Below, piece by piece: positions 14,125 through 53,309 of a DNA stretch of 64,000 nt. Position 1 is the first letter of the stretch; every line of letters begins with the position of its first letter. A program made the translations under genes and the position numbers. Where the stretch lies: NCBI GenBank assembly GCA_964036045.1, contig OZ038379.1, positions 39,494,001 through 39,558,000 of the forward strand, written 5' to 3'. The notes below the pieces were generated by a model. The model saw nothing but the letters and a program-made list of their open reading frames with translations, ran no database searches and was not told the origin of the DNA. Source of the stretch: Eutreptiella sp. 'Long Island Sound 2002' (taxonomy: Eukaryota > Protista > Euglenida).

Positions 14125-14125
14125 T

Positions 14126-30639: not shown

Positions 30640-31991
30640 CGTGGATCACAACAGTCAACACGTTACATGGGCTGTTATAGCCCAACTGCAGGAACGTACT
30701 TGTGGAGATCACAAATCTAGTGCCTTTTGCGCAATGGTGTCAAGCCCAATTCAACTAATCTTCATGCACACCTAAACGCTTTTCAACGCAAACTGGACCA
30801 CTCAAGGCGACAGATGACCACAAAAAAGATTTTTGCGGCCCGATGCAAACATCACACTCCGTTTCCTAAAGACTGAAACCAGCGAGGTACTGTTCTCGGA
30901 TGTTTTCCCGAGGACATACCCCGTAGCGGAAATCATGCAAGGTTCCCAATACAGTCGCACACTCCTAAGCCGCGCACATGTTGGAAAACAACCTGACACA
31001 AACAATGCTCAAACCGGGAATGAAAGTCTTGCAGTGCTTCAGCGTACCCGGACAAGTCAGCTTGAGGCAGCAAAACATGCCAAAAAATTCTCCTCCTACA
31101 GTAGACCCAACACTGTGTGTCACACCTTCGTCCACATTTGTTTTTAGAAAAGACTTTGTTGCTCTCATTTCCATACCGGAAATTGACGGATCTGCTTATG
31201 CACAGCGTCACACCGTGTTCGATGTTTTCTAAAAATAACAGCCAAAGAAAACGACGCAAAGCACCTTTGCTGCATTGTCCGACGTGCCCTAGCCGACATT
31301 TCAGGCCCTATCCAACTCTGGGTAACGAGGTACAACTAATTGCGGTTAGGCCTCTCCACTAAGAGTGCCATAAATGACTTTATATGTAGTCATTGCATTC
31401 GAATGAAGGCTGATCGCCTCCTTTTCAACGATGCAAGGGCGGGTGAACAAATATATTTCACGCCCACACAGGGCGTCAAAGAAGGGTGCCCTTGCTCCCC
31501 GCTTCTGGTAGCCATTGTATACGAGTTGTTGATCAAGCATTCGCTCGCCAAGTACCCGGACTGTTTCAGATTTGTCCATGATATGGCCATCATTGTCAAA
31601 GAGTATTCCCAGTAGGAACAACTGCTCACCGACGTCTCCGTTTGGGGTTCCCAGATTGGGATGCAGTTCAATGCTAACAAAACGGAAGTGTACCACTTTC
31701 CACGGACCACGGGCCTCAGCCGCTGCCTCAAGAGGTGCTGAACAAGCAAAACACATATGGTAGGGACAACATCGCCTCTTGTTCAAAGACCCAAGGTTCC
31801 CTTCTTTGGGCCACACGATTGCTAGCATTGGGTACCGGGGTATTGCCAAGGACCCCCTCTTCGCCGCCCTACAGCCCCAAGTTGCAACATTTACCATTCT
31901 CCCCTTGAAAAGCTCCAAACAACCACAAATTGTAAATTCGGTGCTCATCCCCAAATGGGTGTATAAGACGTTGTTTATGTGGGAGGTATTT
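30640..31991 (+). mobile_element. Older, decayed copy of LINE family A, 5' part (APE and RT remnants); continues at 49585
   Basis: LQE motif near 30685. DVFPRTYPVAEIMQGSQYS resembles DAFVETHPYNVLMGDFNDS in the younger copy. QGVKEGCPCSPLL (about 31470-31510) and QIVNSVLIPKWVYKTLFMWEVF are colinear with 46400-46945. 5' boundary approximate. Confidence 0.85.
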
Positions 31992-31994
31992 CGG

Positions 31995-32018
31995 TCTGAG
32001 TGTCTATTTTTTTTTTCG
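31995..32018 (+). other. Retrocopied euglenid spliced-leader exon
   Basis: TCTGAGTGTCTATTTTTTTTTTCG matches the 3' part of the Euglena SL as I recall it (ACTTTCTGAGTGTCTATTTTTTTTCG), with two extra T. It is followed 9 nt later by ATG 32028 and not by the SL-RNA intron GT. Confidence 0.9.
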
Positions 32019-32027
32019 ACAGCAATC

Positions 32028-34301
32028 ATGACCTGTCACCCGACATCCCGGCGGTAAGTCCTTCGCAGCGGCCACGCCACCAGAAGGACAGGCATTAAGT
32101 TCGGGTTCAGCCGGCCCCCGATGCAGTCCCAGCCCAGAGCCAGCCCAGTCCCAGTCCCATCCTCGATGTTGACCTCGGCCTGCGTCACCCAATTCGCTGC
32201 ATCCCCTGTGGCCATTTTCAGCGCCTATGACCGCAGGGCTACCGAGTTGGACGCCATGTTCCCCACGGCGCCCCAATATAACGGAGGGTACGGGGCAGGG
32301 ACGGACCCCAGTGAGTACACGTACGGGTTCGCCCTCAACAACTTCTCCCCAGCCCCAGCCCCGCTAACGACCTCCACCTATATCGCCGAGTTCGCACCGC
32401 CGCCAGCGGACAAGTTCACTGCCTACGGCCGCAATGATGCCGAGTTGTCCGCGTGGTACGTCGCTGACTACAACAAGTGGTCGGACCCATTCTCTGAGCG
32501 CCCCACTTCCGCCTACCTGACAGGTGTGCACCCTGGTGAGTTGATCCACGCCCGTGGGACTACCGAGTATTCTGGTTTCCGGCCCGACGAGCCTGTACGG
32601 CTTGAGGCTGGTGACCAGATCTCCCAGATATCCCAGGAGGGGGACCTGAACTACTTTGACAACTCTTCCCTGACCCACGCCAAGTCCATCCTTGTCGTCC
32701 TCGCCTGTCAGGTGCTGTTGACGGGTGCCGTTCAGGCCTACCATGCCAACCAGGCTGTCCCTGCCAGCGAAGGCCTTAAGCTGCGGCCTGGTGGGCCCTT
32801 TGATCCTCTGGGCCTAGCTGAAGCTCCTCACAGCCCCACCGAGTTGAAAGCCAAGGAGTCCAGGAACGGCCGCTTGGCCATTATCAGTATGCTGGCCTAC
32901 GCCGTCCAAATCATCGTGCCCGGTGAGGGCCCAGCTAGGAACTGGGCTGCCTGCGCCGCTCACGCCCCCGGCGCCAACGATCTGTCCCTCGTTCTGATGG
33001 GCCAGGTCACACCATCCCGTGTGGCCATGTTTGCCGCTTGTGGCCACAACGCTGCAGAGTTTTCTGCCTGGTACGGCTCTGACTGCAGCGAGTGGTTGGA
33101 CCCTGAGCGTCCCACTTGTGTCTACCTGATAGGTGTGTACCTTGGTGACTGCAGGTGGGGCACTGCTGATTTGGGTGCTGACCGAATCACCCTGGAGCAG
33201 TACCGTAAAGCTGAGTTGATCCACGCCCGTTGGGCCCTGCTGGATATTAAGGGCTGCTCGGCTCCTGAGATCCTGGCCAACATCACTGGTTCCCAGCTCA
33301 GTGGACCCGCGTGTTTCCAGACTGGTGTTGAGATCTCACAGGAGGGTAGCAGCAACCCTTCCCTGATCCACGCCACGCCCATTTTTGCCGTATTGACCTG
33401 TCGGGCGCTGTTGCAGGGTGCCGCTGATGCCCACCATGCCAACCAGGCTGGCCGTGCTAGTGAAGATCCTGGTTTGTTGCACGGTAGCACCTTCAACCCC
33501 CTGGGGCTGGCCGACGGTCCTGACAGTCTCGCCGAGTTTAAGGAGGTCCAGAAACGACGTTTGGCCATGTTCTCCATGCTGGGTTTCTCTGTCCAGGCCA
33601 TCGTGACCAGTGAGGGCCCAGTTGGAAGCTGGGCTACCCACGTAGCTGACGTTTTCAGCTCCTACAGTCTGTCCCTTGCTCTGATGGACCAGGTTGATGC
33701 TTCCTTTGAGGCCATGCTAGCCGCCTGTGACCGGGTCTCTGACAACCTGACTGCCTGGTACAGACCTGAGCGCAATGAGTGGTTGAGCCCGTCCCCCGAT
33801 ATCTCCGCCCCTTATTACCTGACTGGTGAGTTCCCTGGCAATCCCAGTTGTCTGGCCGCCATGGCCTCTGTACAGCAGACGCAGGGGCCGTTTCACATGC
33901 CCCCAGACCACGCCCCAGTCCCGGTCCCAGTTGTATTTCAGTGTGCAGCAGCCCACGGCCTCGCACCACTGTTAGGCGCAGCAGGCACTAGCCTCGCGTC
34001 GGGGCACTGCACTGGCGAGCTCAGCCCCCCCCCTCCCTTGGGGTCACGTCCGCTGGGCCACATTTGGCACCCTCCCCTGGGACTGTACTTGCTGCCCCTG
34101 GCCAAAATATGGACACTGTGGCAGCCTGGTACAATCCTCTCCACAACACGCAACCAGCCCCTTTCCCGGCTAGGAGTCATGCCGAGGCGCATGGGGCCCA
34201 TGATGCATATGGAGACCTGGTGGATGCTGACGGTCTGCCCCTTTCCTTTCCAGCAGTGTAGGGAGACCAGGGTGCAGCAGGCCACGACCTCGCACCATTG
34301 A
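32028..34301 (+). pseudogene. Lhcb: Intronless, diverged LHCII (chlorophyll a/b) polyprotein-derived ORF
   Basis: ATG 32028 is in frame with the 726-aa ORF 32121-34301, with one TAA at 32055. Motifs include AWY..D...W, ELIHARW, PGGPFDPLGLA, KESRNGRLA and GEGP. Three units (partly deleted, near-complete, N-terminus only) are joined by VAMFAA (33021) and EAMLAA (33708) linkers. LHC similarity ends near 33870. Confidence 0.9.
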
Positions 34302-35448
34302 GTCTTGACGCCGCAGGCACGAGCCTCGCGTCTAGCCACCCGGTCCCCGTCTCCACGTACCCGTTGGGCTTGACGGACGACCCTTTCGCCCTCGCTGCCG
34401 CTGGCTACCTGGACACTGCTCACTTCGACAAGCCGGCGTGGCCCACAGCTAGCCCTCCTCGAGATCTCTTCGCAACAGGCACTAATCCGACGCCGACGTC
34501 TGTATCTGAAGTGCACTGGGGGCAGTTGGAGCAACCCCCCGACTCCACCACTACCGCGCCGCCCACATGCCCCTACGACCTGGGCAGCATGTGCGAACGC
34601 GTGTTTACACGAACGGCGTTGGGGGGCAAACGTCGTCACCCCTCCGACACCGACTCCTCCGCCTCCTCGGACACAACCTCTACGGCCTCCACCTCTTCAT
34701 CCCCACGCCGCGATCCAAAATCCAAAAAACACAAGAAACACAAACGACACCACAAGCGCAAAAAACAGAAAAGACACCCCCCCTCCGCCCTTCCCCCTCC
34801 CCTCCAACCGTACCCCTACCCGTACACATACCCGTACTATACACCACAGTAGCACCCACCCCCCCAGTCACTACAGCCACACTACGAGCAACTAACCCCG
34901 CAACCACAAACCCCGCAGCCACAAACCCCGGGCCCGACGCCATATCAACCACACCCACATTCCCCACAGTTCTATTCGTATTACTATCCGTCCTACACCC
35001 AGCCAACGCACCAACCCTACCACTCCCATCCGGACCAATCCCCGCACATCCCGTCCCCGCACAACACCTCCGAACCACCCACCCAACACCCATACCAGCA
35101 CGACCCCTACCAGGCTTCGCCGCACTCCCATCAGCATTATCACGCAAACTACCACCAGAACCACACGCACCCCTACCAACATGACCCGTACTCCGGTCCA
35201 CAGCATCATCAGGCTACTCAATCCCATAGCCAGCATCCCTCCTTCGAGCATCCACCATGTACCTGCGGCTCACTGGTGGCTAAGTGGAAATGTAAAGTTG
35301 GGGCTCATTTGGGGCTCAGTTGTGCATTGCGATGTCTTTGTGCTTGTTTGTTGTGCGTTTTGCATGCTACGTAATGTGCATTTAATGTTTTTAGAAGTTT
35401 TAGATACTCACTTGGTTAGGGTTCAAGGTGGGGCGTACTTTTTTTGGC

Positions 35449-37787
35449 GACGGCTCAGTTGAATGAGCGCCCGATTGAGCCGTCACTGAGCCGTCACTGA
35501 GCCGGCTCAGTGAGCGCTCAGTGAGCGCTCAGTGAGCGCGCCAAATGGCTCAGTGAGCGCTGAGTGAGAGCTAATTGGGGGCTCACTCAGAGGGTTCCCC
35601 CCCCTTTCCGCCTCTCCTCCGCCCCCCTATCCGCCTACCCATCCATTCATTCTCGCTCCCATAGGTCCTATCTTTCACACCATGTCTAATGTTGTCCCAG
35701 GCCTGGAACCGGCAGCTTCAAAGGCTCTCGCGTCTTTCCTTAGTCGCCCCCGGGTACCTACCGCTTTCACAGAGGCAGCGTACCCAGGGGTGCCTTCGAC
35801 GGACCTAGAGCCCTTGAAGCTGTGGGCCCAGCAGCTCCCTGCCCCTTCCCCAGAAGTGGTCCACATCAACGTGTCCGATGTGACCCTTCTTGGAAAGAGC
35901 TGGATGCACCGGCGCAACCAAATGTTGCGCCAGGTGCAGCCAGCTCTTCGTGCCGTACGCTTCCGCTTTCCTGTGGCTGCTGTCCAAGATTTGGTGCAGC
36001 AGTCCTCAGGAAAGCTCATCGGTACCCCCCACGAGTTCGGGACACGGGTTCATGACACCAAAGATCTCCAACACGGTTGGACTTTAGATCTTGGTGTCAG
36101 CCACGTGGCACCCAAGAAGGGACTCCTTGAGCCCCTGCCTTTCGGGGTCGGGGTGGTGTCACGGGAATGGTGGGAAAGCCGGGGGGGAGTATGAGATGCA
36201 AGGGGCGTACTGCAATATTGCTGAGCGGCTAGCCCTGCTCTATGAAGCGCGTGCCGTACGCACACCGGAAGCCTTGCAACCGGGCGCGCAGCGCAACACC
36301 TGGGTAACCATCGGCGTTGACGGCAGCAACCGGTGGAATCGGGCCAACGTGCACTGTGCAGTGGCTGCACCGGGTTGTGGGCCCACACAGCTTGCTAGCT
36401 GGTGGCTGTTCGAGGGTAGCGAGATGTTGGCCACGGTGTACAGCATGCAATCGGAGTGTGACTTCGATACGCAGCTCCGCGCTGCTACGGCCCTGCAACT
36501 GCCGCATGCGGATGGGGTGGCGCATAGCCCCCTATCCTTCGTCCGGGCCGATGGCAACGCCCACATCATGCTGGCCGGCGGGGACGGCTTCACCAAGAAG
36601 AGCCCCGGGGCCATGGTGTGCCACTGCTGCGGGGCAAACAGTGAAACGGTTTTGCGCAAGTTCGGGGGACAAAAGGTTGCCCTGGAAGGAATCAAGGGAC
36701 ATGTACGGCTGACCGGGGTGTTTCCTGACATCCCGGCGGCCGCCGCATTCCTCACTTTGGTGCGCATGGAGTCATGCGTGTTGCCATTGCGGGGGTCAGT
36801 GGAATTGTGCGGGGGCTGGTGACCCATGGAGGGGTATCGAGGAAGAGTGCGGCCACCATGGTGCAGGGGGTTGTAAACGGGGCACGGAAAGTGGCCCGCA
36901 CGGTGCGGCCTGGAAAGTGGGGGGCGGACAAGGCAAATGCCAAAGGACAAGTGCGCATGGAGTTGGGGGCTGCTGCGCACTTTGTCAAGGCCCGGCTGTG
37001 GGGCCCACTGTTGCAGCTGGTTGCACCGGTGATTGGGAACCATCAAGTGGGGGGCAGGCCATGGGTTGATGTGTGCACGGAGTGGTGGGAGGCGTTTGCG
37101 GCCATGGCCGAGGTGGCCTGGAAGGACAACTTAAGGAGTGGTGCAGAGCAACGTGCCTTGCTGCAACGCCAACGGACCATGGGGGCAAGGCACCTTGACC
37201 TAGGATGGGGGAAGACCTTGTGGACGCATATGTGGGTTGACCACATGTATGCGTATATTGCACGGTGGGGGACCATTGCAAGGTTTAGTTGCTTTGCATT
37301 GTAGGGCAGCCATGTGCGACTGAAACGGTTGCTTAGGAATAGTGGGGGGGTTAGCTTGCTGACCGATAGGTCCGGCTTGCAGTGTGTGGTGGATAACCAC
37401 ACACTAGATGATAACCTCCGCAAGGAAGGTTGGGAGGTGGAAAGTAGGGCCGTGACCAAGCAAAGGGGGTTCCAACGACGGTGCATGACTTGGTCACGTG
37501 CCTGGCGGGAGAGGAAGGGGAGAGAGAACATGGTGAGGAGGATTGTGGAATGTGCATTGCGACAAAGGACCAAGTAAGTGCTTATGATGGATGATTTGTG
37601 CCCGTGCATATTAAGTGAGCCCTGAGTGAGCCCTCAATTAGCTCCCACTGAGCGCCCACTGAGCGCTCACTGAGCCATTTGGCGCGCTCACTGAGCGCTC
37701 AGTGAGCCCTCAGTGAGCGCTCAGTGGGCCGGCTCAGTGACGGCTCAGTAACGGCTCAGTCGGGGTGCTCAATCAACTGAGCCGTCG
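35449..37787. repeat. Inner ~150-bp inverted repeats built from CTCAGTGAGCG/CACTGAGC units
   Basis: About 35449-35590 versus 37610-37787 (CGACGGCTCAGTTGA...GGCGCGCCAAATGGCTCAGTGAGCG). Confidence 0.9.
35682..37577 (+). pseudogene. DDE transposase with RAG1/Transib-type catalytic and Zn motifs (two frameshifts, one nonsense codon)
   Basis: TIGVDGS (D at 36319); VRADG (D at 36550); CHCC (36619-36630); GAHG (H at 36765); TLWTHMWVDHMYAYIARWGTIARFSCFAL* with HxxxxH at 37227/37242. TAG at 37302 sits exactly 20 codons after the second His, where RAG1 has catalytic E962 after H942. Confidence 0.75.
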
Positions 37788-39483
37788 AAAAAAAGAAACC
37801 CCCCCGGTGAAATCCTCTGGGCCTAGGGATTGGTATCCCTTTGGGGACATTCCCAAACCCCAACCCACCCCCGAAAGCCACAAGTTTTCACATTAAACCT
37901 CTTGAAAAACACCACTTAGCCCGAAATGAGCCGTTTTGGCCCCAAATGAGCCCCAACTTCACATTTCCAAGTGAGCCGCAGGTACACACCACAAGAACCT
38001 CAGGCACCCGCAGCGCAACAAGAACACAGCCCAGACCAGAAGCACCACGCCGCGCCCCCTCCAGCGCCCCAAAGGGTGACCGGCTCGGGACCCCTACCAT
38101 CCACCCCCCATCCGTCCCGCGGCCCGACGCCCTCTCAACGCCAGAAGCAAGCCAACATTCGCCGGTCCATTAATCGTGACAAGGCAAACCTCTGTCGGAT
38201 GATCGAGGCAGCAGCGGGTTTGCCACAAGGATCTACGCGTCCTGTAGACTCCTATGGCCAGTCGATTGACACGCTTAGGGAGTGGGGGCAGCAGTCGGCC
38301 GAGCGCAACTGGGCCGATTACCACCAGCAACAGCCCCACCCAGCCCCGGTCATGGCCGAGGCGACAAGTGCGCCTTCTGTCACGCGCGACACTACGCAGG
38401 CGCGGGCGGCGGCATCGGGCCCGCGACCGCTCCCTACAGGGGCGCGCCCCCCCACCACACCGTTAGCGCGGGCCGCCAAGCCGGGCCCGCAACCTCCGCC
38501 GAGCGCCTCTACGACGGGAGACGACGGCGCGGCCGCCGCCAGCAGCGAGGAGGGGACAGCAAGCTGTCCGATGGACCTCGATCAATGTGACGACATCGAC
38601 CCCTTTGTGCCGGTACAGGCACAGAGGGACTCCGCGCAAGAGGGAGTTCGCGCTCCCCGATTCCAGGCACGGCCCCGATCAGCGGCCCCTCCGCCAGCGG
38701 CCCCGTCAGCGCCCCACCCCGCATCCCGGCCTCCAAACGGCCCCTCCTCCAGCCCTCCCCCACAGGCCGACGACATCCCCCCGCCATACACCGCTACAGA
38801 CATGCGCCTCCCGTCGGTCAGCTTCCTGCGGGCCCGAGAGTCCCGGCAGGTAGCTGCCATTCCTTCCGCCCTTCCCTCCTACCAGGACATGGTTGCACTC
38901 CACGACTCCTTCTTGTCGCAGGCCAGCTCGCACATAGGACATACGAAAACTTGGGTGCATGAGACATGTTTGCACCCTGCTGTATCCTATGCCACTTCTC
39001 CCTTTCACCCACTGTCCTCCGTTCTCGCAGGAGTGAGGAGGCCCTCGTCGCAAGTGGCAAAAGGGCCCACTCGGGAGGGCCATGCCATGCGGGCAGTAAT
39101 TAAGGTGACCCCTTTCACTCCCGTTTCGCCAGCGGATGCAAGCCGACGCCTCCCGCCCCCCGGAGTTCTCATTCCATCACATGATCTTATATTATGCCTC
39201 ATGGTATTGGTGGCAACAGTTGTACACCCTCTACCCTCCAAAGGTCGGGGGCCTCTCGATACAGGTGGTGCGTACTTCGAGGCAGCATGTATCCGTCGTA
39301 TTGTGTCGACCACAACCAGCACGACTCAGCACGTTCTTATGACCTCCAGGGTGACCTTCTTCGTGTACCAAATTGCATCTGCTTGGGAATTTTGCGTGCC
39401 TTGCACTACATGGGATTGGCGTTCCAGTCAGCACCCCCCCCCCTCCACAGTCAACAACGTGGCACCACGACGTGGTACAAGAT

Positions 39484-39510
39484 GGGGATGTAGAGGCCAA
39501 CCTGGGACCA
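39484..39510 (+). other. 2A/StopGo-like motif GDVEANLGP
   Basis: One substitution (CTG to CCG) from canonical GDVExNPGP. Confidence 0.65.
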
Positions 39511-40263
39511 CAACCCAGCCAGCAAATTCTCTCAGGGTCACGGCTTCTAGGGCATCCAAGCGGTCGCATTACCACCACGTATCCGCCGGCGCCACAGGCC
39601 GGGGTCACAGGACCAGCACTCCTGGAACCACCCAATCCTGCCCGGCCGTGGAATGACCTCACCACTATTGGAGACATCTCGAAATTTTTGCGCAGCACGG
39701 CTTCCATCAATACAAAGGTCTCGTCTCTAGTGGCACTCCACCATCACCTGCTCCAACAGTGCCATGTCGACCACAATGCCCTCCCGGGCGAGATGCATGG
39801 CGCGGTGCTCTGCACACCACCTAGGGACAGCAAAACTGTCCCATGCGCCCCGGCTAGCCCAACGACAGACACCACCGAGGTTCACAGTTCCGGATCACCG
39901 ATGACCCCCACAGGAGGTCTAGACATCTAGTGTTCACGATGCGGCATCCGAGATTTCTATTCACTATGCTGCAGCACATGTGGCGACCACCTCTGGGGTC
40001 TCGACGTCCATGGAGGGATGGCACCGGCACCGGTACCTGGCCTCGATGTTGAAACTGACGTGCAAGAGGTAGCATCGTCATCCACCCCTGCATCAGGCAC
40101 TACCTCCTTTCTGACTTGGTGTGCACAACGCGAATCGCCACCGAGGTACTCGCCACAACCCGAGCGACCACGGGCTGCACACTCCTCGCACCTCCACGTC
40201 GCCTGCCACATGGACCAACGGCCAACGGCCAATCATGGGCCGCAAATTCCGGTTCACCAGTGT

Positions 40264-40290
40264 GGAGATGTCCAACGACAACAAGACCCA
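40264..40290 (+). other. Highly degenerate 2A-like motif (QC)GDVQRQQDP
   Basis: Same 9-residue register and the same QCG prefix as the 41219 motif, but four consensus positions are changed. Confidence 0.3.
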
Positions 40291-40605
40291 ATTGCATATC
40301 TCATCCCAATTCAAACGGGTACAGATGATCCCGACTGGGGATGGCTCCCCGCCGGGTTGCTACACCTCCATGTGGGGCCCCCACCCCCTACGGATGCACA
40401 AGGTGACTCCAGCCGGGGATGGCTCCCTACCTATCTGCTCTATCGCCCGGAGGAACTCCCGACCTCTGCGGAAGCTCGTGCCTCACCAAGGTCCTCATTG
40501 CTTCAGCTCGGGGAGGCCCATGGCGAACATGGAGAGGTGTCTTCGCTTGCTGGATCGGGAGGGGGCCAATACTCCATTGAAATTCTGAGACAAGACCTCG
40601 AGCGT

Positions 40606-40719
40606 TGCCCTCTGTGTTACGAGGATGCCTTGCTGTTTCCGCTACCGTGTCACCCGCTGCACCAGCTGTGCACTCTATGCGCATATGACCCCCGGCTTCA
40701 GGGATGCCCATGGCGATGC
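40606..40719 (+). other. RING-finger-like (C3HC4) motif in ORF 40018-40959
   Basis: CPLC-x10-C-x3-H-x2-CTLC-x8-CPWRC. Confidence 0.65.
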
Positions 40720-43534: not shown

Positions 43535-44268
43535 CTGTCGCCAGTTTTGGTCGGTACTTGACGTTGGCCGAGGAGCCTAGCTTCTACGTGGAACCCACTT
43601 ACGTGCATTATGTGAGGGCGACCTACGAAAACCCCCAAAGTGCGGGTCTTGCGGCAAGGCAGTTCCTTAAGGTTAAAACTGGAGTCCTCCAATGTACCAC
43701 GGGCGACTCTACCCAGGATGCTCTAATCCGGGACCGCATCGATTCCATGTTGTTGGATGTGGTCCCGGACTCCTCTCAGGTCCGCCTTCCACATCGCCTC
43801 CAGTCCGCTGCGAAGTTCTTGGGAGCCAAGGAGGCCATGGCAAAACTGCATGATGAGCACCTCAAGACGAAACGTCTCCACGAACCCGCCATGGACGCGC
43901 AAGAGAAACTGATGCAATGGGATACGGAGGATCCTCTCCTCCAACCGAAGCGTGCCAAAACGAAAGCCCAAGACGCCCGTCTCCGCATGGACACGCGCCG
44001 ACCTACGGCCTCCATCACCAGCGACCTTAAGATCAAGACCAGTGCCTCCAAGCCACAACTGGCTGCCCCGGCCCACAAACCAAATGTAAAGCCCAAACCG
44101 CCCACGCCCGCACGGCAGGTGTACCCAAACCAACACGCAAGTGACCCCAGTCTGGGGGCACGCTGGGATTCTACCTGTGGGTCCTGTGCCTCCTCGTCTG
44201 CCTGGAGGGTTGTGTTAGCCACGTCATGCGGCATTCACTGCTCCTCGATATTCATGAGCTCGTCGTAG
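43420..44268 (+). pseudogene. Frameshifted continuation of the unknown ORF1-like protein
   Basis: Overlaps the end of 40625-43534. A homologous remnant at about 55140-55290 reads RLKEIAMDAAKSIISWD versus RLHEPAMDAQEKLMQWD here. Confidence 0.6.
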
Positions 44269-44378
44269 TGGGGGCAGGACGCGGGATTACATGGTACGTC
44301 GGACGCCCACGGGTGAGGCGCCGTTCGCCCCGGCGCACATGGCAGCATGGTGGGCCCATGGCATGAGATGGGAACACC

Positions 44379-45245
44379 GTGGAGCGCGCATTTACCGGGT
44401 CTGGGACAGGGGGCGGCCTTTCAGTTGGCTTGTTTATAAGACGTACCTTTCGGGGGCACCTGGGCCCCTACAAGCCGTGGGAAGCCGTTCTAATGTTGCT
44501 TGGGGGAGACATCGAGCTCAACCCCGGGCCTTCGAGTGGTCAATGGGCTGCCGTGTATACCGCACTGAACAAGGGAGTGGTCAAGTCTTCTACCGGTTGC
44601 ACGCAACCAAGTGGCGATGGCCTCCGGTGGGCATCCTTCAATATTGGGGGCCCCACGGTTGATTGGGACCGATGGGTCACCATCGTACAGCTCTTGTCCG
44701 ATATGCACCTCGACATTGTCGGCTTACAAGAAGTTAAGCCTACCTTCTCCAACATAGAGGCGGCAACAACATTAACCTTCCCCGAGTGGCAGATCTACTA
44801 TCACCCACACCCGTCCGGGACCATCAATGGGGTGGCATTCCTAGTCCGCAACACAATGGACCACTTCGTGCTCAAGGACGGCAATCAACGTGCCTCGCTT
44901 TTTGCAGATCCAGACGGGACCTTTCTCGGACTTACTTTGCAGCTTCCCAACAAGCCACGACTACGGGTCCTCAACTACTATGGACTCAAAACTGCAGCCA
45001 CCAAGAAGAGGCAAGATGCCTTCGTTGAGACACACCCTTACAATGTGCTCATGGGCGACTTCAACGACTCTATTTGGAGCAACACCCCAAGTCGGTTTTG
45101 GCACGATGACCTTCTGAACCGCCGTCTATATATACGACCCGCTGCACGAACTATGCCCCGATGGGTCTGTACAGGCGGGACACACCAGAGGGTGCCACCG
45201 CCTAGATGCCATCCTGGTCTCTTCGCGGTGCTGGGGGAATGTTAG
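44379..45245 (+). pseudogene. APE endonuclease preceded by canonical 2A motif
   Basis: LMLLGGDIELNPGP, then WASFNIGG, DIVGLQE, NGVAFLV, VLNYYG and LMGDFNDS; frameshifted near the C-terminus (LPTSDHRLV in the next frame). Confidence 0.92.
44505..44531 (+). other. Canonical 2A/StopGo motif GDIELNPGP
   Basis: Exact D-(V/I)-E-x-N-P-G-P, directly upstream of APE. Confidence 0.92.
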
Positions 45246-45769
45246 CCCCATGACATACCATACTGTCGCCCTGCCCACCTCCGACCACCGGCTCGTCCTA
45301 ATGACCACAGGCCTCACCTCCACGGACTGTGAGTCCTTCATCAAAGCCACGCACCCTGCCAAGAAGTGGAATGTGCGGCAAGAGCGAGCCGCCGTGCAAG
45401 AGACACATCACATACTCGCCGGGCAAGATACCCCAATGGACGCAGTAGCACGCGCTGATGCGGTCCTCAAGGCGGTGGCGTAGGCTGTCATTCGACAGGG
45501 GAAGCGCACCAAGCGGACCCGTCTCAAAACTAACACACAACAGTGGCACAAACACTTCCAAGTGGTCAAGAAGCGCATCGCGCAGGAGCTGCGCGAAGTG
45601 GCCAACAAGCGCCTCTATACCATGCGTCATGCTGCCCTCCGCAAGAATGGGGTATTCTTCCGCTTGACCGAAAATTGGACCCGCGGACCATTGAAGCCCA
45701 CGCAAAAGCAACCCAGTCCGGACGTGGCGCGCGCTTAGCGAAAACTTCAGTGGCAACCCCCCCTATGAC

Positions 45770-47424
45770 ATGGCGGCCATTGAAGCACTCATCCCACAGC
45801 TCATCCCACAGGGGCACATGATTGATGACCCACCAAGCTTCGATGAGTTCGAAAGGGCATGTATGGGCAAGCGCAAGAAAGCCGTGGGCCCTGATGGGGT
45901 TCCGCACCGCTTGCTGGGTATGCTGCCAGACGATACACTGCACACATTGTATGAGGGGGTGCTGGAAGTATGGAGAACAGGAGATATCCCGCAGCATTGG
46001 CTGCGGTCTGAGGTGGTGTTGATGTACAAGAAAGGGGATCGTGACCGCCCCGAGAATTATCGACCCATTGCCGTGACCAACAATATATATCGTGTTATCA
46101 TGAAGCTGTACAGGCCCTGTCTGCAGCGCCTCGTGAACCGGGTTGCTAGCCCTGAGCAGTATGGGTCAAGGCCTTTGCACACCGCAAGTGAGCAAGCTGC
46201 AAACTTAGTCATCTCCCTCCACGAGCAGGAAATGGAGGGCCGGGAGCCATTTGTTGTTTTGTTGGATGTTGCCAAAGCCTTCCCGTCCACAATCCATGAG
46301 GTCATTTTCTCCATCCTGAACCATGCCGGGCTCCCGCCGAACTATGTGAACGCCTTCCGCACGATCTATGCAAATTCTGACACATACACGGACATACAAG
46401 GAGAACAGATTCATTTGAAGCCCACGCGGGGCGTCAAAGAAGGATGCCCCTGCTCCCCGCTCTTGTTCGCTATTGTATATGAGTTGTTGATGAAGCGTTT
46501 GATCGCCAAGTACCCGGACACATTCGTTTATGTTGACAATATTGCCATCATTGTCAAAGATTATTCTGAATTGGAACGACTCCTCACCGACCTCTCCGCT
46601 TGGGGGTCCCAGATTGGGATTCAGTTCAATCCTAACAAGACAGAAGTGTATCACTTCCACAGACCACGGTCCTCGGGCGCTACCTTAGGGGGTGCCCAAC
46701 AGGCAAAGCACATCTGGTGGGGACAGCATCGCCTTGACTTCAAGGATCCAATGTTCACCTACTTGGGCCACACCATCGCTGGTGTTGGGTATAGGGGTAA
46801 GCTAGGGATGCGCTCTTCGCCGCCCTACAAGCTCAGGTAGCCGCATACACCATCCTCCCGTTGACAAGCTTCGAGCGGGCACAAATCGTCAATTCCGTAC
46901 TCATCCCTATGTGGGTGTATAAGAGTCTCTTTATGTGGGATGTGCGTTGGGGCAACCGCATGGAGACCGCCTTCGAAGAGTTTGTCCTTCAGGCTCCCCG
47001 CGTGGAAAAGTACCTGCAGTACCGCCTCTACACGGACGTCACTGAAGGGGGACTGGGCCTCCACAGCGCGTCCTGGGCCGGTTTATGCGCCCTTATCGAG
47101 CTAGTCCAACGGGCCTTGCGAGTTCCACACAGGCCTATGACGAGGCATACCAACTCAGGTCACCTCCCACGCATGGTGGAGCAGTACCGCAAAACCTTGG
47201 TGTCCTTTGGTATGGAAATGGGGCGCCTCCCTCGCGCCGGCCAATCGACAGGTCGAAAGGCACCCAAACGGGCCCACGATGACCTCGAGTCACTCTTCGA
47301 TGATGAGGACTCCGACGATTGCAGGTTTGAGTCGCTTGTACCCCACCAGTACCTCCAATCCCTGCGTCCCAAGAGCGGCACTAGTCCCGTGCAACCCAAC
47401 GTTGAGCAGTCCGGCCGTGCATGA
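45770..47424 (+). pseudogene. Non-LTR reverse transcriptase (family A)
   Basis: KAVGPDGVP, NYRPIAV, QYGSRP, LLDVAKAFPS, GVKEGCPCSPLLF, YVDN, QFNPNKT and YLG; frameshift near 46800. Confidence 0.95.
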
Positions 47425-47439
47425 CACCAGCAGGGGCAA

Positions 47440-49354
47440 CCCACGGGGTCGACGTGGTACAGTGACGGCAGCCTGTTGGAAGGGCTTGCTGGCACAGGGG
47501 TTGTCAACGGACCTATGCGCATCCAGGCGAGAGTACTAGGCCCGCAGACAATTTCTAGGGTTGAAATGTACGGCGTATGGATCGCGGCGTGCCTCGCCCA
47601 ACCGGGGGACTCTATCATGCTTGACAACCGGGCTGCGGCCCGATGCGTCTCCAAGCCACCCAGCCCACAATCGTCCGACAATGATTTGCACGACGCAGCG
47701 TACCAGCTTATCTCCACCAAGGCACTCCAGGTACGTTGGGCACGTGGGCATCGGGACCTTAAAAAGGCGCATAGTTTGCAAGATTATCACGACAGGATTG
47801 GCAACGAATTGGCCGACCTTGCAGCCCCAGCGGGCAGTACCATGCACCCTTGCCGTGGTCTGGGCAGCACATCATCCGCGGATATCCACTTGAACAGCCA
47901 TATAATGCCAACCCTTTGCCCGTAAGTGGATCATCAAATCACGCCCCCAGAACCTGGTACCCGAGGCGCATTGGACGTCATGGCTGTCTTTGCGCGCGGT
48001 CAACCGAGATAAGTGGGGTCCATGGCTGTGGGGGACGCTGCAATTGCCGGGGTATGGGGCACCTTGGGAAACCGGGCCGGTGCTGTGCCCACGCTGTGGA
48101 CAGCGCCATGGCCTCGCAGTGCAGGAGTGCCTCTTGTCATGCCCCTCCGAATCCCGGTTTCGGGACATTTGCATTGACGCATGGGAGACATGGAAAGCGG
48201 AGGCAACCAAGTGGCGACAAACAGCGTCCGCAGACGAACTGCGCATGTGCACCCGCTTGCAGTTCCCACACTCCCTTCAACGATCCTTCCTTCCAGTCCA
48301 GGCGCACTGGAGGGTGGTAGTTGCCACATGGCACTTCCACATATTCCAGCGATTGCAGGCGTGGATCGTTGACAAGCTGCAGCACGTCCCAACTTTCGTC
48401 AGCAATAAGCGGCCCACGCACATCGTCCCACCTGTTGCTGGGGCCCTGCCGCAGGTAGCTAAACCTACGGCCCGCAACATTTGGAACCACGTGAGAGGTG
48501 TTCTGTCGATCCCGCCGCGATCAGAGCCACGTTTCACAAATACTGCGCCCACGGTTGAGGAATTTCGCTGGCAATTGACACAAGCGGTCACCACTGCCGA
48601 GCGCACGTGGGTCTTGGAGGCCATGGCCCGGCACCACCATGTAGCCACGCCGCGCAAACGGCCCAGAGAACCGTCGCCGCCACCGGCACAGGCTCCGGCC
48701 TCACCGCTGCGCGAGCCTCGTAAAAATCATGCCGGACCTTTCCTTGCACAGGCCAAGCGGGTCATGCTACACGCCCAAATGCAGGCCGCACGACTCTGCC
48801 TGGAAGAGGTGGCGCAGGCACTCGCCCGGCAAGCCATCACACAGAAGTCCCTCTTCTTGGCACACCACCACGAGCACTTGTGCCGGCAAGCGTACTTCCT
48901 CTGCAAGGAACACACGGCGCGGTGGTATGTAGAAGCGCAGCAGGCGGTCTGTCACTTGTCCTGGATGGCGGATTCCCGCCGACTACGCTTCCGCCAGTGG
49001 CGAACGGCTGTCCTGCCCGAGGCGCGGTCCACGGTGTGGCGCAAGCTCGCCGTGGCATCCTCGTGTTGGAAGCAGGCACGTGTTTCGGTGTCCACCTGCA
49101 TCCAAGCGGAAGAAGCATCCGAATGGCGGCATGTGTCCCAAGTGCACGCAGTGACCCTTACGGCCTTACGGCGGACGACGTTGTCAGACCCCCGATGGGA
49201 CATCCGAGGGGCCACCGCACAGCGCATGAAGCGCTGCGGGACGAGCACCCACCCGAGATACACAAGAAACGGAGGACAGAGACGCCGGAGGTTCCTAGTG
49301 ATCTCCAGGATATGGAAATCCTGCCGGAGGACATGGGCGATGTCATTGTCTTGA
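47440..49354 (+). pseudogene. RNase H plus C-terminal CxxC region (family A)
   Basis: WYSDGS...RVEMYG...IMLDN...VRWARGH...GNELAD, then CPRCGQRH...LLSCP and a long Ala/Arg-rich tail. Confidence 0.88.
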
Positions 49355-49584
49355 CTGGATTGTAACTCCTTGAGAGGTCCGGGAGGACGCGCATACCCGT
49401 GCAAACGGGGCGACAGGGGTGGGGCAAGGCGCAGGACTCGTTCCTCCCGCCACCCCGCCGCAGCCGTCTTGGTGAGGGTAGGTCATACCGAACCCAAAGT
49501 TGGCCCTGTCAGTGACCCATGTCCTGCTATGTGTACTCTCAATGGACACTTGGTGAAACTTCGGTCACGAGTGAAAAAAAAAAA

Positions 49585-52500
49585 GGAGGTATTTGAGGGC
49601 AATTGGATGGAGGCTGCCTTCGAAGGTTTCGTACTATAGGCTCCCCGTGTGGAAAAGTATTTGCAGCACGCTATCTACACGGATATCATGTACGGGGCAC
49701 TGGGCCTCCACCATGCGTCGTGGGCCGGGTTATTTGCCCTCGTCCAGCTAGTTCAACGGGTTGCGGGTTCCACAAAGGCCCTTGGTGAAGAGTACCAACT
49801 TTGGTCATCTCCTTCACATCGTAGAGAAGTACCGCAAGATCTTGTTGTCCTTTGGTATGGAAATGGGACGCGTTTGCGCACCAGCCAGTCCACTGTTCGA
49901 AGGGCACCCAAGCGCACAACGATGACTTGAAGTCACTATTTGATGATGAGGATTCCGACGACTTTAGGTTTGAGTCGCTTGTGCCCAGCAAGTAATTTCA
50001 ATCTCTCCCAAGGCCGGCAGTGGTCCCGTGCAACCCAACGTGGTGCATTCCACACGCGCATGGCACTAGCGAGACTGGCCCACTCAGTCAATTTGGTACA
50101 GGGATGGCAACTGATTGGAAGTGCGGGCCGTCACAGGCATGGTCAATGGATCTTTGCGCATCCAAGCAAGGGTAGTGGGCCCACGCCCGATCGACAGGGC
50201 CAAAGTGTACGGCGTATGGATAGCGGCCCAACCGAGGGCCTCTGGTGTGCTTGACAATGGAGCAGGGACGTAATGCATCTCCAAGCCACCCAGGCCACAG
50301 CCGTCAGACAGCGCCTTGCAGGACGCAAAATGTCCGCGTATCTTCAACAAATCACTACACGTACGTTGGGTGCGCGGGTACCGGGTCCCCAAAATGACAC
50401 ATAGCCTACAAGACTAACCCCCCCAACCAACCAAAAATGTACCCCCCCCCTGAAATTTATACCCCTGAGGCCTAGTGCGTGTACTCCCAAAATCTATACA
50501 CCCCTTCAGCCATGTGCAAGCAGACGGAACCAATTGAAAACCCACAGTGTTAACACCATTATAAAAGTCACTTTGTTGAAGAATGCATCAATGGTGGTTT
50601 GCTTCATCACATTGCCAATATGGGCAGAGGCATGGGTTACCGCAGCTGAACATTCTGCACCAGCGATCAGCAACTGTGACCAGCAGGTCGCAACCCAAAA
50701 TTCCTTGTTTGTGCTCAAACAATTGTTTGCCTTTTCACTTTTAGGCAGTTTTCTGTCCACCCGGTCTGAGTTACATGATTGGTCCTGAATTGGTGCAGTG
50801 TGTTTCCTACCTCCTTGGCAAATTATATCCCCCCAAAATCTATAACCCTCTGGCACTGTTGAGCAACCTGTTAAAATGTGTACCCCGTGGGTATACATTT
50901 GGGAGGGCGGGTTTATCTGGAGAGGATAGGTAACGAATCGGACGATTGCGTAACCTGAGCAACCAGTCTTATGCACCCTCGTTGCCGCCCGGGGAGCACA
51001 TCACCCTCGGATGTCATCTTGAATAATCCTAGAATGTTGTTCCGGCGCGCACCTGGATGGTCAAATGACGCCCCAAGAAGCTAGTACTTGAGGCACATTG
51101 GACATGATGGCTACCCTTGTGTGGCGTTAATCGAGATAAGTGGGCACCGTTGCTGTGGGGTACACTGTGGTGCATGGCATAGGGGGCACCTCGAGAAACC
51201 GAGTTGCTGCGGTGTACACAATGCGGGCAGTGCCATGGCCCCGCAGCGCAGGAGTACTTTTTGGAATGCTCCTCCGAGTCACGGTTTTGTTACATTTGGA
51301 TTGACACATGGGAGATATTGAAGCTACAGACCGTGAACTGGCGGCAAACGGCGCCCACCAACCAGCTGCACATGTGCCCTAGATTTTAGTTCGTCCATTC
51401 CCATCAGCAATCTTCCCTTGTGGTAGACGCGCACGGGAGGATGGTAGTTGCCACATGGCAATTGCACGTGTTCCAACGTTGGTACGCATGGGTCTTTGAC
51501 AAGATGCAGCATGCTCCACCGTTCGTCAGCATTGAACGCCATGCGCGCTCTGCGGTTGTGGCCGCTTGCTTGAACTGCCACCGAAGCTCCTCCAACGTGG
51601 GGACGGTATTTTTCAATTGTGGCTTTGCCTTTGGTGGGATGGATAGTACTCCTGTGACGTGGTTCGAGCTGATGCGTACCCGAGGCTTGGCCACGTGCGG
51701 GGGGCCCCGGCAACCGGCGGGAGTATGTGCTTGGGTCGGTCATGGAGGCCATGGCCCGGCGTTGCCATGTAGCACCACTGCGCTAGCGACCTAGAGAGCC
51801 GTCTCTGCTACCGGCACGGACACAAGCCTCACCGCCGTGAGAGTTTTGTGAACTCCATGCTCAACGTATCTTGGTGCAAGCACGACGCACTTTAGTACAC
51901 ACTTAAGCACAAGCCACACAGCTTTGCCTAGAAGAGGTGGTGTAGGCACTTAACCAACATAACACCACCTGGAAGTCCCTCTCTTTGGCGCACCACCACA
52001 AGCACGTGTGCCGTCAAGCGTATTTCTTTTACAACGAGCAACTATCACGGTGGTGCCTAGAGGCGCAACATGCCTTGTACCAATCGTCCTCGACTGCAGC
52101 CTGTTGACGGCTGGGATTCCGCCAGCGGAGCATGGCCATCTTCGCTAAAACGGGGTCCACGACATTGCGCAAGCTCCTTGCAGCTCTCTGTGTTGGGAGC
52201 AAGCTAATTGTTTGCGGTCCACCACCATCCAAATGTACAAAGCGTCCCAGAGGCGGCATGTGCCTAGAGTGCACGTGGTAACCCAGACGGCTCTACGGCG
52301 CACAACTTTTTTGGACCCCGGACGGGAAGTCCAAGAGAACACCACACACGACATGAAAGGACTTCGTGATGTGCACCCCAATGAGACACACAAGCGGCGC
52401 ATGACAAAAGATTTAGAGGTTCGCGGTGATCTCTGGGATACGGAGATCCCGCCCAAGGACATGGGCGATGTCATTGTTTCAACTGGATTGTAACACCCTG

Positions 52501-52767: not shown

Positions 52768-53303
52768 GAAGGGGTTATCAGATGCTATCTCTTGCATGGC
52801 CCCAGGAAGGGCGTTGGCTACATACCCTTTGCTTTCTTGAGTCTCCCCGGCATTCAACAAGGGCTAAAAAACACACATTGTCAGGTGCGGGTGTTGGTTG
52901 CCACGACTCCATGGGTCTTGCAGTCCAAAGGGCATGAGCCCAAACTCCCATGCCGCCTTGTTCATAAAGCCAGGTGTGTCGTCATTGAGGTGGCAGAGGC
53001 ATGACTCTTGCACCATGGAGACATAGTGGGGGCCTGAAGGGGTTATCAGATGCTATCTCTTGCATGGCCCCAGGAAGGGCGTTGGCTACATACCCTTTGC
53101 TTTCTTGAGTCTCCCCGGCATTCAACAAGGGCTAAAAAACACACATTGTAAGGTGCGGGTGTTGGTTGCCACGACTCCATGGCTCTTGCACTCCAAAGGG
53201 CATGAGCCCAAACTCCCATGCCGCCTTGTTCATAAAGCCAGGTGTGTCGTCATTGAGGTGGCAGAGGCATGACTCTTGCACCATGGAGACATAGTGGGGG
53301 CCT
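52768..53303 (+). repeat. 268-bp tandem duplication
   Basis: 52768-53035 versus 53036-53303; I counted three mismatches. Confidence 0.95.
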
Positions 53304-53309
53304 CTTAAA

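What the first reader, a model, noticed from the sequence alone, without database searches (positions are those of the whole stretch)
31982..49594. 17.6-kb retro-insertion running from a spliced leader to poly(A), with exact TSD
Seen: an SL exon sits 3 nt inside the left TSD, poly(A) abuts the right TSD, the 10-bp TSD is exact, and the host LINE frame rejoins. Established: SL is added post-transcriptionally in euglenids, and target-primed reverse transcription makes TSDs. Inference: a full-length, trans-spliced RNA of about 15 kb (excluding the nested transposon) was reverse-transcribed. The LINE would then have been expressed as an SL-capped mRNA fused to an LHC-derived 5' region, rather than using an internal promoter/ribozyme 5' end as trypanosome L1Tc does. 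Alternative: an RT template switch from LINE RNA onto an SL-mRNA.
Basis: partly seen in the sequence, partly recalled or inferred. Interest (0 to 1): 0.9.

Follow-up and report, generated by a model that had tools for sequence, protein, structure and literature searches.

The report
Jumping gene headed by spliced leader
This stretch is one full-length copy of a giant Euglena jumping gene (a LINE) whose complete copies all begin with the cell's own mRNA tag, the spliced leader, and whose first protein starts with a decayed light-harvesting-antenna sequence, so how such copies are switched on again is an open question.

Summary
A 10-bp duplication (GGAGGTATTT, 31982-31991 and 49585-49594) brackets an insert. 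The insert starts 3 nt later with the Euglena gracilis spliced leader (SL) and ends in A11. It interrupts a related LINE whose reading frame resumes exactly once one duplicate is removed. That host lies on the + strand.

It is not a one-off chimera. I fetched nine more copies of the same element from a public genome assembly. All six copies that reach the 5' end (the window's and five fetched) start in the SL at the same junction. They sit at six unrelated sites. Two have their own poly(A) and 11-12-bp duplications. The other four copies are 5'-truncated.

The SL-to-antenna (LHC) and antenna-to-ORF1 junctions are identical in every copy that includes them. This rules out a single template switch for this insertion.

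The LHC part is the N-terminus of a giant ORF1, not a leader borrowed recently. It has been kept free of stops, but its amino acids show no constraint. The 2.7-kb transposon at 35258-37986 inserted later.

Trans-splicing of the template RNA is inferred, not shown at RNA level. How SL-headed copies regenerate the same 5' end is unresolved.

This scan had already noted SL-headed LINEs elsewhere in this genome. I found no paper describing them.

The parts
31982..31991 (+). Left target-site duplication, GGAGGTATTT
   Evidence: this 10-mer occurs only here and at 49585 in the window.
31992..31994 (+). Three extra nucleotides (CGG) between the duplication and the SL
   Evidence: Other copies have 0 extra nt (L005) or 5 (L007, TTCTT) at this point. 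They are probably untemplated or cap-proximal additions; this is inference.
31995..32018 (+). Spliced-leader sequence, positions 5-26 of the E. gracilis SL, with T10 instead of T8
   Evidence: The canonical SL ACTTTCTGAGTGTCTATTTTTTTTCG is given in PMC6242988. L005 and L007 carry it 26/26 at the same junction.
32019..32165 (+). 5' leader. It holds ACAG, then a conserved 9-codon upstream ORF (32028-32057), then a conserved GGTAAGT motif (32053-32059).
   Evidence: Alignment of five copies, plus L009 and L010. No similarity to the canonical LHC gene. No Rfam family matches.
32166..33842 (+). LHC-derived module: two full chlorophyll a/b-binding units plus the start of a third. It begins at the conserved ATG that opens ORF1.
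   Evidence: Pfam PF00504, E = 2e-34. tblastn with a canonical LHCII polyprotein gives 45-55% identity in a single frame. The ATG is conserved in all copies, and P0069 and P0080 start there.
33843..35257 (+). ORF1 continued: further LHC vestiges, a basic stretch and a P/Q/H/Y-rich low-complexity region. A C-run near 34024 sets the frame (window C9; C10 is the in-frame length).
   Evidence: Four young copies (plus P0069, which is L010's product, and P0080, which is L009's) read straight from LHC into ORF1.
35258..37986 (.). Nested DNA transposon with terminal inverted repeats. It inserted later and was not part of the retrotransposed RNA.
   Evidence: 31-nt inverted repeat at 35285-35315 and 37939-37969, 97% complementary. 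It is absent at this site in all eight other copies that cover it.
37987..44144 (+). Rest of ORF1, broken by frameshifts in this copy. It ends at an in-frame UGA (44142-44144) that is conserved in all copies.
   Evidence: One open stretch of 2478 codons in L005. Strong third-codon-position excess among shared substitutions from about 40750 onward. Stop context shown.
44145..49363 (+). ORF2: APE-type endonuclease (about 44631-45159), reverse transcriptase (about 46031-46778), a weak RNase H-like match and a C-terminal region. It is fragmented in this copy.
   Evidence: Pfam PF03372 and PF00078. An intact 1696-1736-codon ORF2 exists in L006.
49364..49573 (+). 3' untranslated region
   Evidence: The same 3' end (...GGTCACGAGT, one more base, then the A-run) is seen in L005, L006 and L007.
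49574..49584 (+). Poly(A) tail, A11
   Evidence: L005 has an A12 run and L007 an A11 run at the same position.
49585..49594 (+). Right target-site duplication, GGAGGTATTT
31442..31991 (+). Host LINE, left part: end of its RT and start of its post-RT region
   Evidence: tblastn with the insert's own proteins gives 57-71% identity, ending at 31988.
49595..52476 (+). Host LINE, right part, which resumes in the same frame
   Evidence: tblastn: post-RT residues 31-137 lie at 49598-49915 and the C-terminal ORF homologue at 51117-52476. Frame arithmetic in the full report.

Best explanation
The insert is one older, now broken, full-length member of an abundant Euglena gracilis non-LTR retrotransposon family.

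Layout of the element's RNA, 5' to 3':
- the 26-nt spliced leader;
- a 147-nt leader;
- a giant ORF1 whose N-terminus is a decayed LHCII polyprotein fragment;
- an in-frame UGA;
- ORF2 (APE endonuclease, RT, weak RNase H-like match);
- a 3' UTR and poly(A).

Proposed mechanism:
1. The element's own endonuclease nicked a related LINE.
2. Reverse transcription was primed on the poly(A) and ran about 14.9 kb, to within four nucleotides of the SL's 5' end.
3. Second-strand joining left a 10-bp duplication.
4. A DNA transposon later landed at 35258-37986.

Shown here: the boundaries, the family, the shared junctions, the SL at every complete 5' end, and the ORF architecture.

Inferred: the SL was added to the template RNA by trans-splicing, as for ordinary Euglena mRNAs. 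The LHC region is kept open only because translation of ORF1 starts upstream of it.
For: - Boundaries, duplication, poly(A) and host-frame rejoining.
- Composition step at both ends.
- Nine further copies at 93-97% identity along the whole length, LHC part included.
- Six of six 5'-complete copies start in the SL at the same junction, with unrelated flanks.
- L005 and L007 have their own poly(A) plus 11-12-bp duplications.
- Four copies are 5'-truncated at different points, as LINEs are.
- APE and RT domains.
- Copy number: the ORF2 cluster has 131 members and the ORF1 cluster 56.
- Age spread: private substitutions are 2.5% in the window copy and 0.25-0.7% in the young copies.
- The SL sequence matches the published E. 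gracilis SL.
- Unrelated SL-headed insertions occur in the fetched loci (L002 near 13300, L004 near 810).
- Left junction bridged by a contig from another data set.
- LHC read in frame into ORF1.
- No stop in 574 LHC codons, against 12.7 expected under neutral decay (0 of 2000 simulations reached zero).
Against: - No RNA read or contig covering the SL/body junction was obtained. The one RNA library that holds the family (X11) has zero depth at 31897-32093.
- No source copy with an upstream outron and an AG acceptor was seen among the six complete 5' ends. The route by which the SL is re-acquired is therefore open.
- The window copy's ORFs are broken in about ten places. Its C-run is one C short, so this copy itself is dead.
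- Homopolymer lengths in this assembly may include sequencing error.
Confidence: 0.85

Rival explanations
1. The SL is inherited DNA rather than re-added in each cycle. It would have been captured once. Each new copy would then be transcribed from, or close to, its own SL, for example because the SL acts as an internal initiator or promoter element. No trans-splicing would be needed after the first event.
For: - All six complete copies are SL-headed, and none shows an outron.
- No tandem relict SL is present.
- No variant lacking the ACAG that follows the SL T-tract is listed. Re-splicing of a read-through transcript at that AG would produce such a variant.
- Young copies with nearly intact ORFs are SL-headed.
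- From my own knowledge, not tested here: in Ascaris the SL sequence is an intragenic promoter element of the SL RNA gene.
Against: - Unrelated insertions in the same loci also start with the SL, as do other families noted by this scan. This points to a general post-transcriptional process.
- The SL is exactly the cellular sequence in two subfamilies that differ by about 5% elsewhere. With only 26 nt this is weak evidence.
- No promoter activity was tested.
Confidence: 0.15
2. This insertion is a one-off chimera. During integration the reverse transcriptase switched from LINE RNA onto an SL-capped LHC mRNA.
For: LHC mRNAs are very abundant in Euglena, and template switching onto abundant RNAs is known for human L1 (both from my own knowledge). 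A switch of this kind, or a 5' transduction, could still be how the family's ancestor acquired its LHC part.
Against: - The SL/leader, leader/LHC and LHC/ORF1 junctions are identical in nine other copies at other sites.
- The LHC part has the same between-copy identity as the rest of the element.
- It is only 66-69% identical in DNA to a real LHCII gene and lacks the gene's presequence.
Confidence: 0.02
3. The structure is an assembly artefact: a contig mis-join that places a LINE copy inside another LINE.
For: The region is highly repetitive, and the assembly shows variation in homopolymer length.
Against: - The exact 10-bp duplication and the poly(A) abutting it.
- Codon-exact resumption of the host frame.
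- A contig from run X2 bridging the left junction without mismatch.
- The same architecture with their own duplications at L005 and L007.
Confidence: 0.02

Closest known systems
SL-relict retrogenes of dinoflagellates (recycled cDNAs; PMC5585692, PMC6050394)
   Same: A post-transcriptionally added spliced leader is fixed in genomic DNA at the 5' end of a reverse-transcribed copy. This marks the template as a mature trans-spliced RNA.
   Different: - Those are retrocopies of cellular genes. This is the autonomous retrotransposon itself.
- Dinoflagellate copies often carry tandem truncated relict leaders from repeated cycles. None is present in six copies here.
Human L1 5' transduction and L1 chimeric retrocopies (U6/L1 and mRNA/L1; 10.1101/2025.02.02.635956)
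   Same: Non-LINE sequence lies 5' of LINE sequence inside one pair of target-site duplications.
   Different: Those are single events. Here the foreign part (LHC) is a fixed, in-frame N-terminal portion of ORF1, shared by all copies of two subfamilies.
L1Tc/ingi of trypanosomatids (Pr77 internal promoter plus HDV-like ribozyme; PMC1874656, PMC3185411)
   Same: A euglenozoan LINE with APE endonuclease, RT and an RNase H-like region, a poly(A) tail and target-site duplications.
   Different: - L1Tc makes unspliced transcripts from an internal promoter, and its 5' end is cut by a ribozyme. Here the 5' end is the SL, and no ribozyme family matches.
- No close protein relative outside this family's own cluster carries a source name (the nearest are unnamed, 44% and 32% identical); named proteins appear only at 30% identity or less.
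SLACS / CZAR / CRE, the SL-gene-specific retrotransposons of trypanosomatids
   Same: A retrotransposon physically joined to SL sequence.
   Different: From my own knowledge, those elements insert site-specifically inside SL RNA genes and use a restriction-like endonuclease. Here the complete SL is followed directly by the element, at dispersed and unrelated sites, and the endonuclease is APE-type.
SL-carrying transposon transcripts in Hydra (PMC12220107)
   Same: Transposable-element RNAs use the host's SL trans-splicing. About 30% of TE Iso-Seq reads there carry an SL.
   Different: That is RNA-level evidence across mixed TE classes. The passages I read do not report the SL fixed at the 5' end of genomic LINE copies. 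Here the evidence is at DNA level, and the RNA level is missing.

Membership tests
Non-LTR retrotransposon (LINE) with APE-type endonuclease | Encodes an apurinic/apyrimidinic-type endonuclease and a reverse transcriptase in one ORF | tested here: met
   PF03372 and PF00078 in the window fragments and in the intact ORF2 of L006.
Non-LTR retrotransposon (LINE) with APE-type endonuclease | 3' poly(A) and variable target-site duplications at dispersed sites | tested here: met
   Window: A11 and 10 bp. L005: A12 and 11-12 bp. L007: A11 and 11 bp.
Non-LTR retrotransposon (LINE) with APE-type endonuclease | Copies truncated at variable 5' positions but sharing the 3' end | tested here: met
   L001, L003, L004 and L006 start at window-equivalent 32956, 32131, 32384 and 38926.
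Retrocopy of an SL-trans-spliced RNA (dinoflagellate-type SL relict) | Complete or nearly complete host SL directly at the 5' end of the copy | tested here: met
   Six of six complete copies. Two carry the SL 26/26.
Retrocopy of an SL-trans-spliced RNA (dinoflagellate-type SL relict) | Tandem truncated relict leaders from repeated recycling | tested here: not met
   A single SL in every copy.
Retrocopy of an SL-trans-spliced RNA (dinoflagellate-type SL relict) | SL-headed transcripts of the same gene exist | tested here: inconclusive
   The RNA library X11 holds the LHC module but has no depth over the SL junction.
One-off chimeric retrocopy (template switch or 5' transduction) | The junction between the two RNAs is unique to one insertion | tested here: not met
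   The same junctions occur in nine other copies.
L1Tc/ingi clade | Pr77 hallmark with an HDV-like ribozyme at the 5' end | tested here: not met
   No Rfam match at E up to 1 in 31800-33000. The 5' end is the SL.
L1Tc/ingi clade | RT groups with the ingi/L1Tc clade in a phylogeny | not tested
   Only a similarity search was run. It returned no named kinetoplastid element. The best matches outside the family are 44% and 32% identical and carry no name.
SLACS/CZAR/CRE | Site-specific insertion inside SL RNA genes | tested here: not met
   Six different flanks, none of them SL-gene-like.
Light-harvesting chlorophyll a/b-binding protein (functional LHC) | Pfam PF00504 domain | tested here: met
   E = 2e-34, two units.
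Light-harvesting chlorophyll a/b-binding protein (functional LHC) | Plastid-targeting presequence, and purifying selection on the amino-acid sequence | tested here: not met
   - The module starts in an inter-unit linker and has no presequence.
- Shared substitutions show no codon periodicity.
- One copy amplified units that already carried a stop.

The most novel reading that the evidence does not exclude
The SL at the 5' end may be more than a scar of trans-splicing. It could be the family's solution to the LINE 5'-end problem. Once copied into DNA, the SL, perhaps together with the conserved leader, would let each new copy regenerate an identical SL-headed RNA. It could act as an internal initiator or promoter element, or direct a processing event that restores the same end. 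Under this reading SL-headed copies are themselves source elements, and no outron-bearing master is needed.
Probability: 0.15. Interest if true: 0.85.

Novelty: new variant of a known kind. Interest (0 to 1): 0.7.

Why it matters
LINEs must solve one problem: every new copy needs to be transcribed again from its own first nucleotide. Known solutions are internal promoters, ribozymes that cut the element out of host transcripts, and site-specific insertion into transcribed genes.

Here an abundant, recently active LINE family has the host's spliced leader as its first nucleotides. This implies one of two things. Either its RNA is made mRNA-like by the host's trans-splicing machinery, or the leader has become part of the element.

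Either way a paradox results, and it can be tested. A copy that starts with the SL has lost the upstream acceptor that would let it receive a new SL at the same place.

The family also documents a piece of a photosynthesis gene carried for a long time as the translated N-terminus of a retrotransposon protein, with no detectable constraint on its amino acids. The SL also gives a clean marker of complete 5' ends for annotating Euglena's repeat-rich genome.

Tried and rejected
- **Host frame on the - strand.** A 241-codon open stretch crosses the empty site, but it has no homology. The real host LINE is on the + strand.
- **Template-switch or one-off chimera.** Rejected by the shared junctions.
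- **Cellular donor gene for the LHC module.** Every hit above 55% identity that I fetched (P0003, P0005, P0006, P0008) proved to be a copy of this LINE. The best true LHC genes are 46-48% identical.
- **LHC homology in the 147-nt leader.** None found.
- **HDV-like ribozyme or any Rfam family at the 5' end.** None.
- **RNA evidence for SL-headed transcripts.**
  - The indexed runs of the organism are stored as contigs of unknown library type.
  - The only labelled RNA library (X11, an estuary metatranscriptome) covers the LHC module but not the SL junction.
  - No pile-up of molecule starts could be read from contigs.
- **Amino-acid selection on the LHC module.** Codon-position counts of shared substitutions are flat, both with 8 and with 9 copies.
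- **TSD of L002, L009 and L010.** Their 3' ends lie beyond the 10-kb flank limit.
- **Literature.** Searches for SL-headed LINEs in Euglena found nothing.
Full report
**1. The observation**

The left end reads GGAGGTATTT (31982-31991), then CGG, then TCTGAGTGTCTA-T10-CG (31995-32018). The right end reads A11 (49574-49584), then GGAGGTATTT (49585-49594). This 10-mer occurs nowhere else in the 64-kb window on either strand. G+C jumps from about 0.48 to about 0.61 at 32000 and drops again at 49500.

The published Euglena gracilis spliced leader is ACTTTCTGAGTGTCTATTTTTTTTCG (PMC6242988). The window therefore carries SL positions 5-26 with two extra T. About half of the contig depth in other data sets lacks those two T.

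**2. The host**

- An open stretch on the - strand crosses the empty site but has no homology.
- tblastn with the insert's own proteins finds a related LINE at 57-71% identity. Its RT ends at 31841. Its post-RT residues 1-28 end at 31988, and residues 31-137 resume at 49598.
- Removing 17603 nt (the insert plus one duplicate) puts 49598 at 31995, in the same phase as 31905. Only two codons lie between the two halves.

This is the signature of a clean insertion with a 10-bp duplication.

**3. It is a family, not a one-off**

A protein search with the LHC ORF returned near-identical proteins from a public genome assembly (ENA ERZ25074135). I fetched nine loci that carry the same element: L001-L007, L009 and L010.
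- All are 93-97% identical to the window copy along the whole length, LHC part included.
- The eight of these nine copies that cover window-equivalent 35257-37987 are contiguous across it. The 2729-bp inverted-repeat element at 35258-37986 is therefore a later insertion.
- The retrotransposed RNA was thus about 14.86 kb, poly(A) included.

**4. Every complete 5' end is the SL**

| Copy | Where the SL starts | Note |
|---|---|---|
| window | T5 | CGG precedes it |
| L002 | T7 | two changes in the SL |
| L005 | A1 | 26/26 |
| L007 | A1 | 26/26, TTCTT precedes it |
| L009 | C2 | |
| L010 | C2 | T9 instead of T8 |

- In each copy the SL is followed by A(C/T)(A/G)GCAATCATGACCTGTCACCC.
- The six upstream flanks are unrelated to one another.
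- L005 has an A12 run (the first one or two A may belong to the duplication) and the duplication AACATGTGGTAC. L007 has A11 and GGATTGACAGT.
- L001, L003, L004 and L006 are truncated at window-equivalent 32956, 32131, 32384 and 38926.
- Cluster sizes are 131 (ORF2) and 56 (ORF1) members at 90% identity or more. A 3.1-kb environmental contig (L011) is 99.3% identical to L010.
- Private substitutions are 2.5% in the window copy, 1.4% in L002 and 0.25-0.7% in the young subfamily.

The SL-LHC-LINE structure has therefore persisted through at least two subfamilies that differ by about 5%.

**5. What the LHC part is**

Pfam finds two chlorophyll a/b-binding units. Aligned to a canonical Euglena LHCII polyprotein (P0004, locus L008):
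- the units are 45-55% identical in protein and 66-69% in DNA;
- differences are spread almost evenly over codon positions (0.33-0.35, 0.23-0.29 and 0.37-0.40);
- the module starts in the inter-unit linker (MLTSACVTQFA...) and not in the presequence;
- the 147-nt leader shows no LHC similarity.

Every protein hit above 55% identity that I fetched turned out to be this LINE. No cellular donor is visible.

The window's ATG at 32121 is private. The conserved start is the ATG at 32166, which also opens P0069 and P0080. In those two proteins (the products of L010 and L009), and likewise in L001 and L007, a C10 run near 34024 puts the LHC frame directly into ORF1. The window has C9. L003 has C11. 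L005 and L002 are also off by one.

The working element therefore encodes one giant ORF1 that begins with LHC-derived sequence. It continues through further LHC vestiges, a basic stretch and a low-complexity region, and ends at a UGA (44142-44144) conserved in all nine aligned copies. ORF2 follows in the same frame. ORF2 has APE, RT and a weak RNase H match.

**6. Is the LHC part under selection?**

Two results point different ways, and one explanation reconciles them.

*Kept open.* The LHC frame has no stop in 574 codons in the window. It has none in L003, L005 or L001, and one in L002. The other two frames have 9-41 stops. Randomly substituting 33% of a canonical LHC sequence gave 12.7 stops on average, never fewer than 4 in 2000 trials.

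*No amino-acid constraint.* Substitutions shared by two or more copies show no codon periodicity from 32100 to about 40700. From about 40750 to 45900 the third position is strongly enriched, for example 1:0:11. In L004 the array grew to about seven units that share the same premature stop.

*Reconciliation (inference).* The region is translated because the start codon lies upstream of it. Stops and frameshifts are therefore purged in the active lineage, while the amino-acid sequence is free to drift. How the ancestor acquired the LHC piece cannot be told from these data. It could have been insertion into an LHC gene with 5' transduction, or a template switch onto an abundant LHC mRNA.

**7. 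RNA and read evidence**

Only contig-level data were available.
- A contig of run X2 covers 31700-32024 with no mismatch and bridges the left junction.
- In an estuary metatranscriptome (X11), a 918-nt contig matches the LHC module at about 93%. It carries the 24-nt insertion typical of the L003 subfamily.
- The depth of the LINE relative to the high-copy nested transposon is reversed in X11 compared with runs X1 and X2 (library type not on record, presumably DNA). The ratio is roughly 16:1 in X11 and 1:10 in X1 and X2. This suggests transcription but does not prove it.
- The SL junction has no depth in X11. SL-headed transcripts were therefore not observed.

**8. Mechanism and the open problem**

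The simplest reading is that the element's RNA is trans-spliced like other Euglena mRNAs, and that target-primed reverse transcription runs to within 0-6 nt of the capped end. Unrelated SL-headed insertions in the fetched loci agree with a general process. These lie in L002 near 13300 and L004 near 810. Other notes of this scan agree as well.

An SL-headed DNA copy, however, has no acceptor upstream of its body.
- Re-splicing at the AG inside the old SL would give a tandem relict.
- Re-splicing at the ACAG that follows the SL's T-tract would delete those four bases.

Neither product appears among the six copies, nor among the indels listed for the contig data. That list was truncated. So either a few outron-bearing source copies exist that I did not sample, or the SL in DNA helps to regenerate the same 5' end. 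I rate the second, more novel reading at about 0.15.

**9. Comparison with known systems**

- SL relicts in DNA are known for dinoflagellate retrogenes (PMC5585692, PMC6050394).
- SL-carrying TE transcripts are known in Hydra (PMC12220107).
- L1Tc uses an internal promoter and a ribozyme and gives unspliced transcripts (PMC1874656, PMC3185411).
- No ribozyme or other Rfam family matches here.
- ORF2 has no named close relative.
- I found no paper that describes SL-headed LINEs in Euglena.
- This scan had already flagged SL-headed LINEs of other families in this genome, and the LHC module on this window. My tests here are independent of those notes.

**Verdict**

This is a new variant of a known kind: a LINE whose complete copies are headed by the host spliced leader and whose ORF1 begins with a captured antenna-protein sequence.

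Noticed in passing
window 35258-37986; also L001 18578-20383: The nested element has 31-nt terminal inverted repeats (35285-35315 and 37939-37969). Its contig depth in runs X1 and X2 is 10-100 times that of the LINE. A 96.8% identical copy sits at a different place in the L001 copy. The empty site in L002 leaves the duplication length ambiguous (2 or 5 bp) because of a CCA repeat.
   Followed up: partly
window 44142-44144, and the same column in L001-L003, L005-L007, L009, L010: ORF1 and ORF2 are in the same frame and are separated by a single UGA followed by C. This is conserved in all nine aligned copies and suggests stop-codon read-through or reinitiation.
   Followed up: partly
L002 about 13297-14921: A 1.6-kb insertion nested in the L002 copy begins with the SL (TTTCTGAGTGTCTATTTTTTTTCG). 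It has no poly(A) at its 3' end and encodes a repetitive peptide. It is absent at the equivalent window position, near 38745.
   Followed up: partly
L004 about 811-840: A different, LINE-like element upstream in L004 also starts with a slightly altered SL (TTTCGGAGTGTCTATTTTTTTTCCG).
   Followed up: no
L004 7591-12600: In this copy the LHC array has about seven units instead of two. Four of the five units examined share the same Gln-to-stop change, so the array expanded after the unit was already disabled.
   Followed up: partly
L006 10220-10284 and 20930-21000: This is a 5'-truncated copy with an unusually long duplication of at least 38 bp. An AT-rich non-poly(A) tail (TTAATAATTAATAGG...) stands in place of the A-run.
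   Followed up: no
window 32053-32059, and the same place in L002, L005, L007, L009, L010: A perfect 5'-splice-site-like motif (G|GTAAGT) lies 35 nt after the SL, at the end of the 9-codon upstream ORF. It is conserved in all six complete copies. Its function is unknown.
   Followed up: no
L003 5620-5669: The 5'-truncated L003 copy is directly preceded by a 22-nt A-run and a (GT)n microsatellite.
   Followed up: no
window 31992-49584, excluding the nested element: Of the 298 substitutions private to the window copy, 131 are C-to-T or G-to-A.
   Followed up: no
L008 3001-5580: A canonical LHCII polyprotein, presequence included, is encoded as one uninterrupted 859-codon ORF in the assembly. No SL lies upstream. 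I did not check whether it is the functional gene or an intronless copy.
   Followed up: no
window 53189-59151 and 22938-23423: Further diverged LINE fragments of the same broad lineage lie in the window, at 31-45% protein identity to the insert's ORFs.
   Followed up: no
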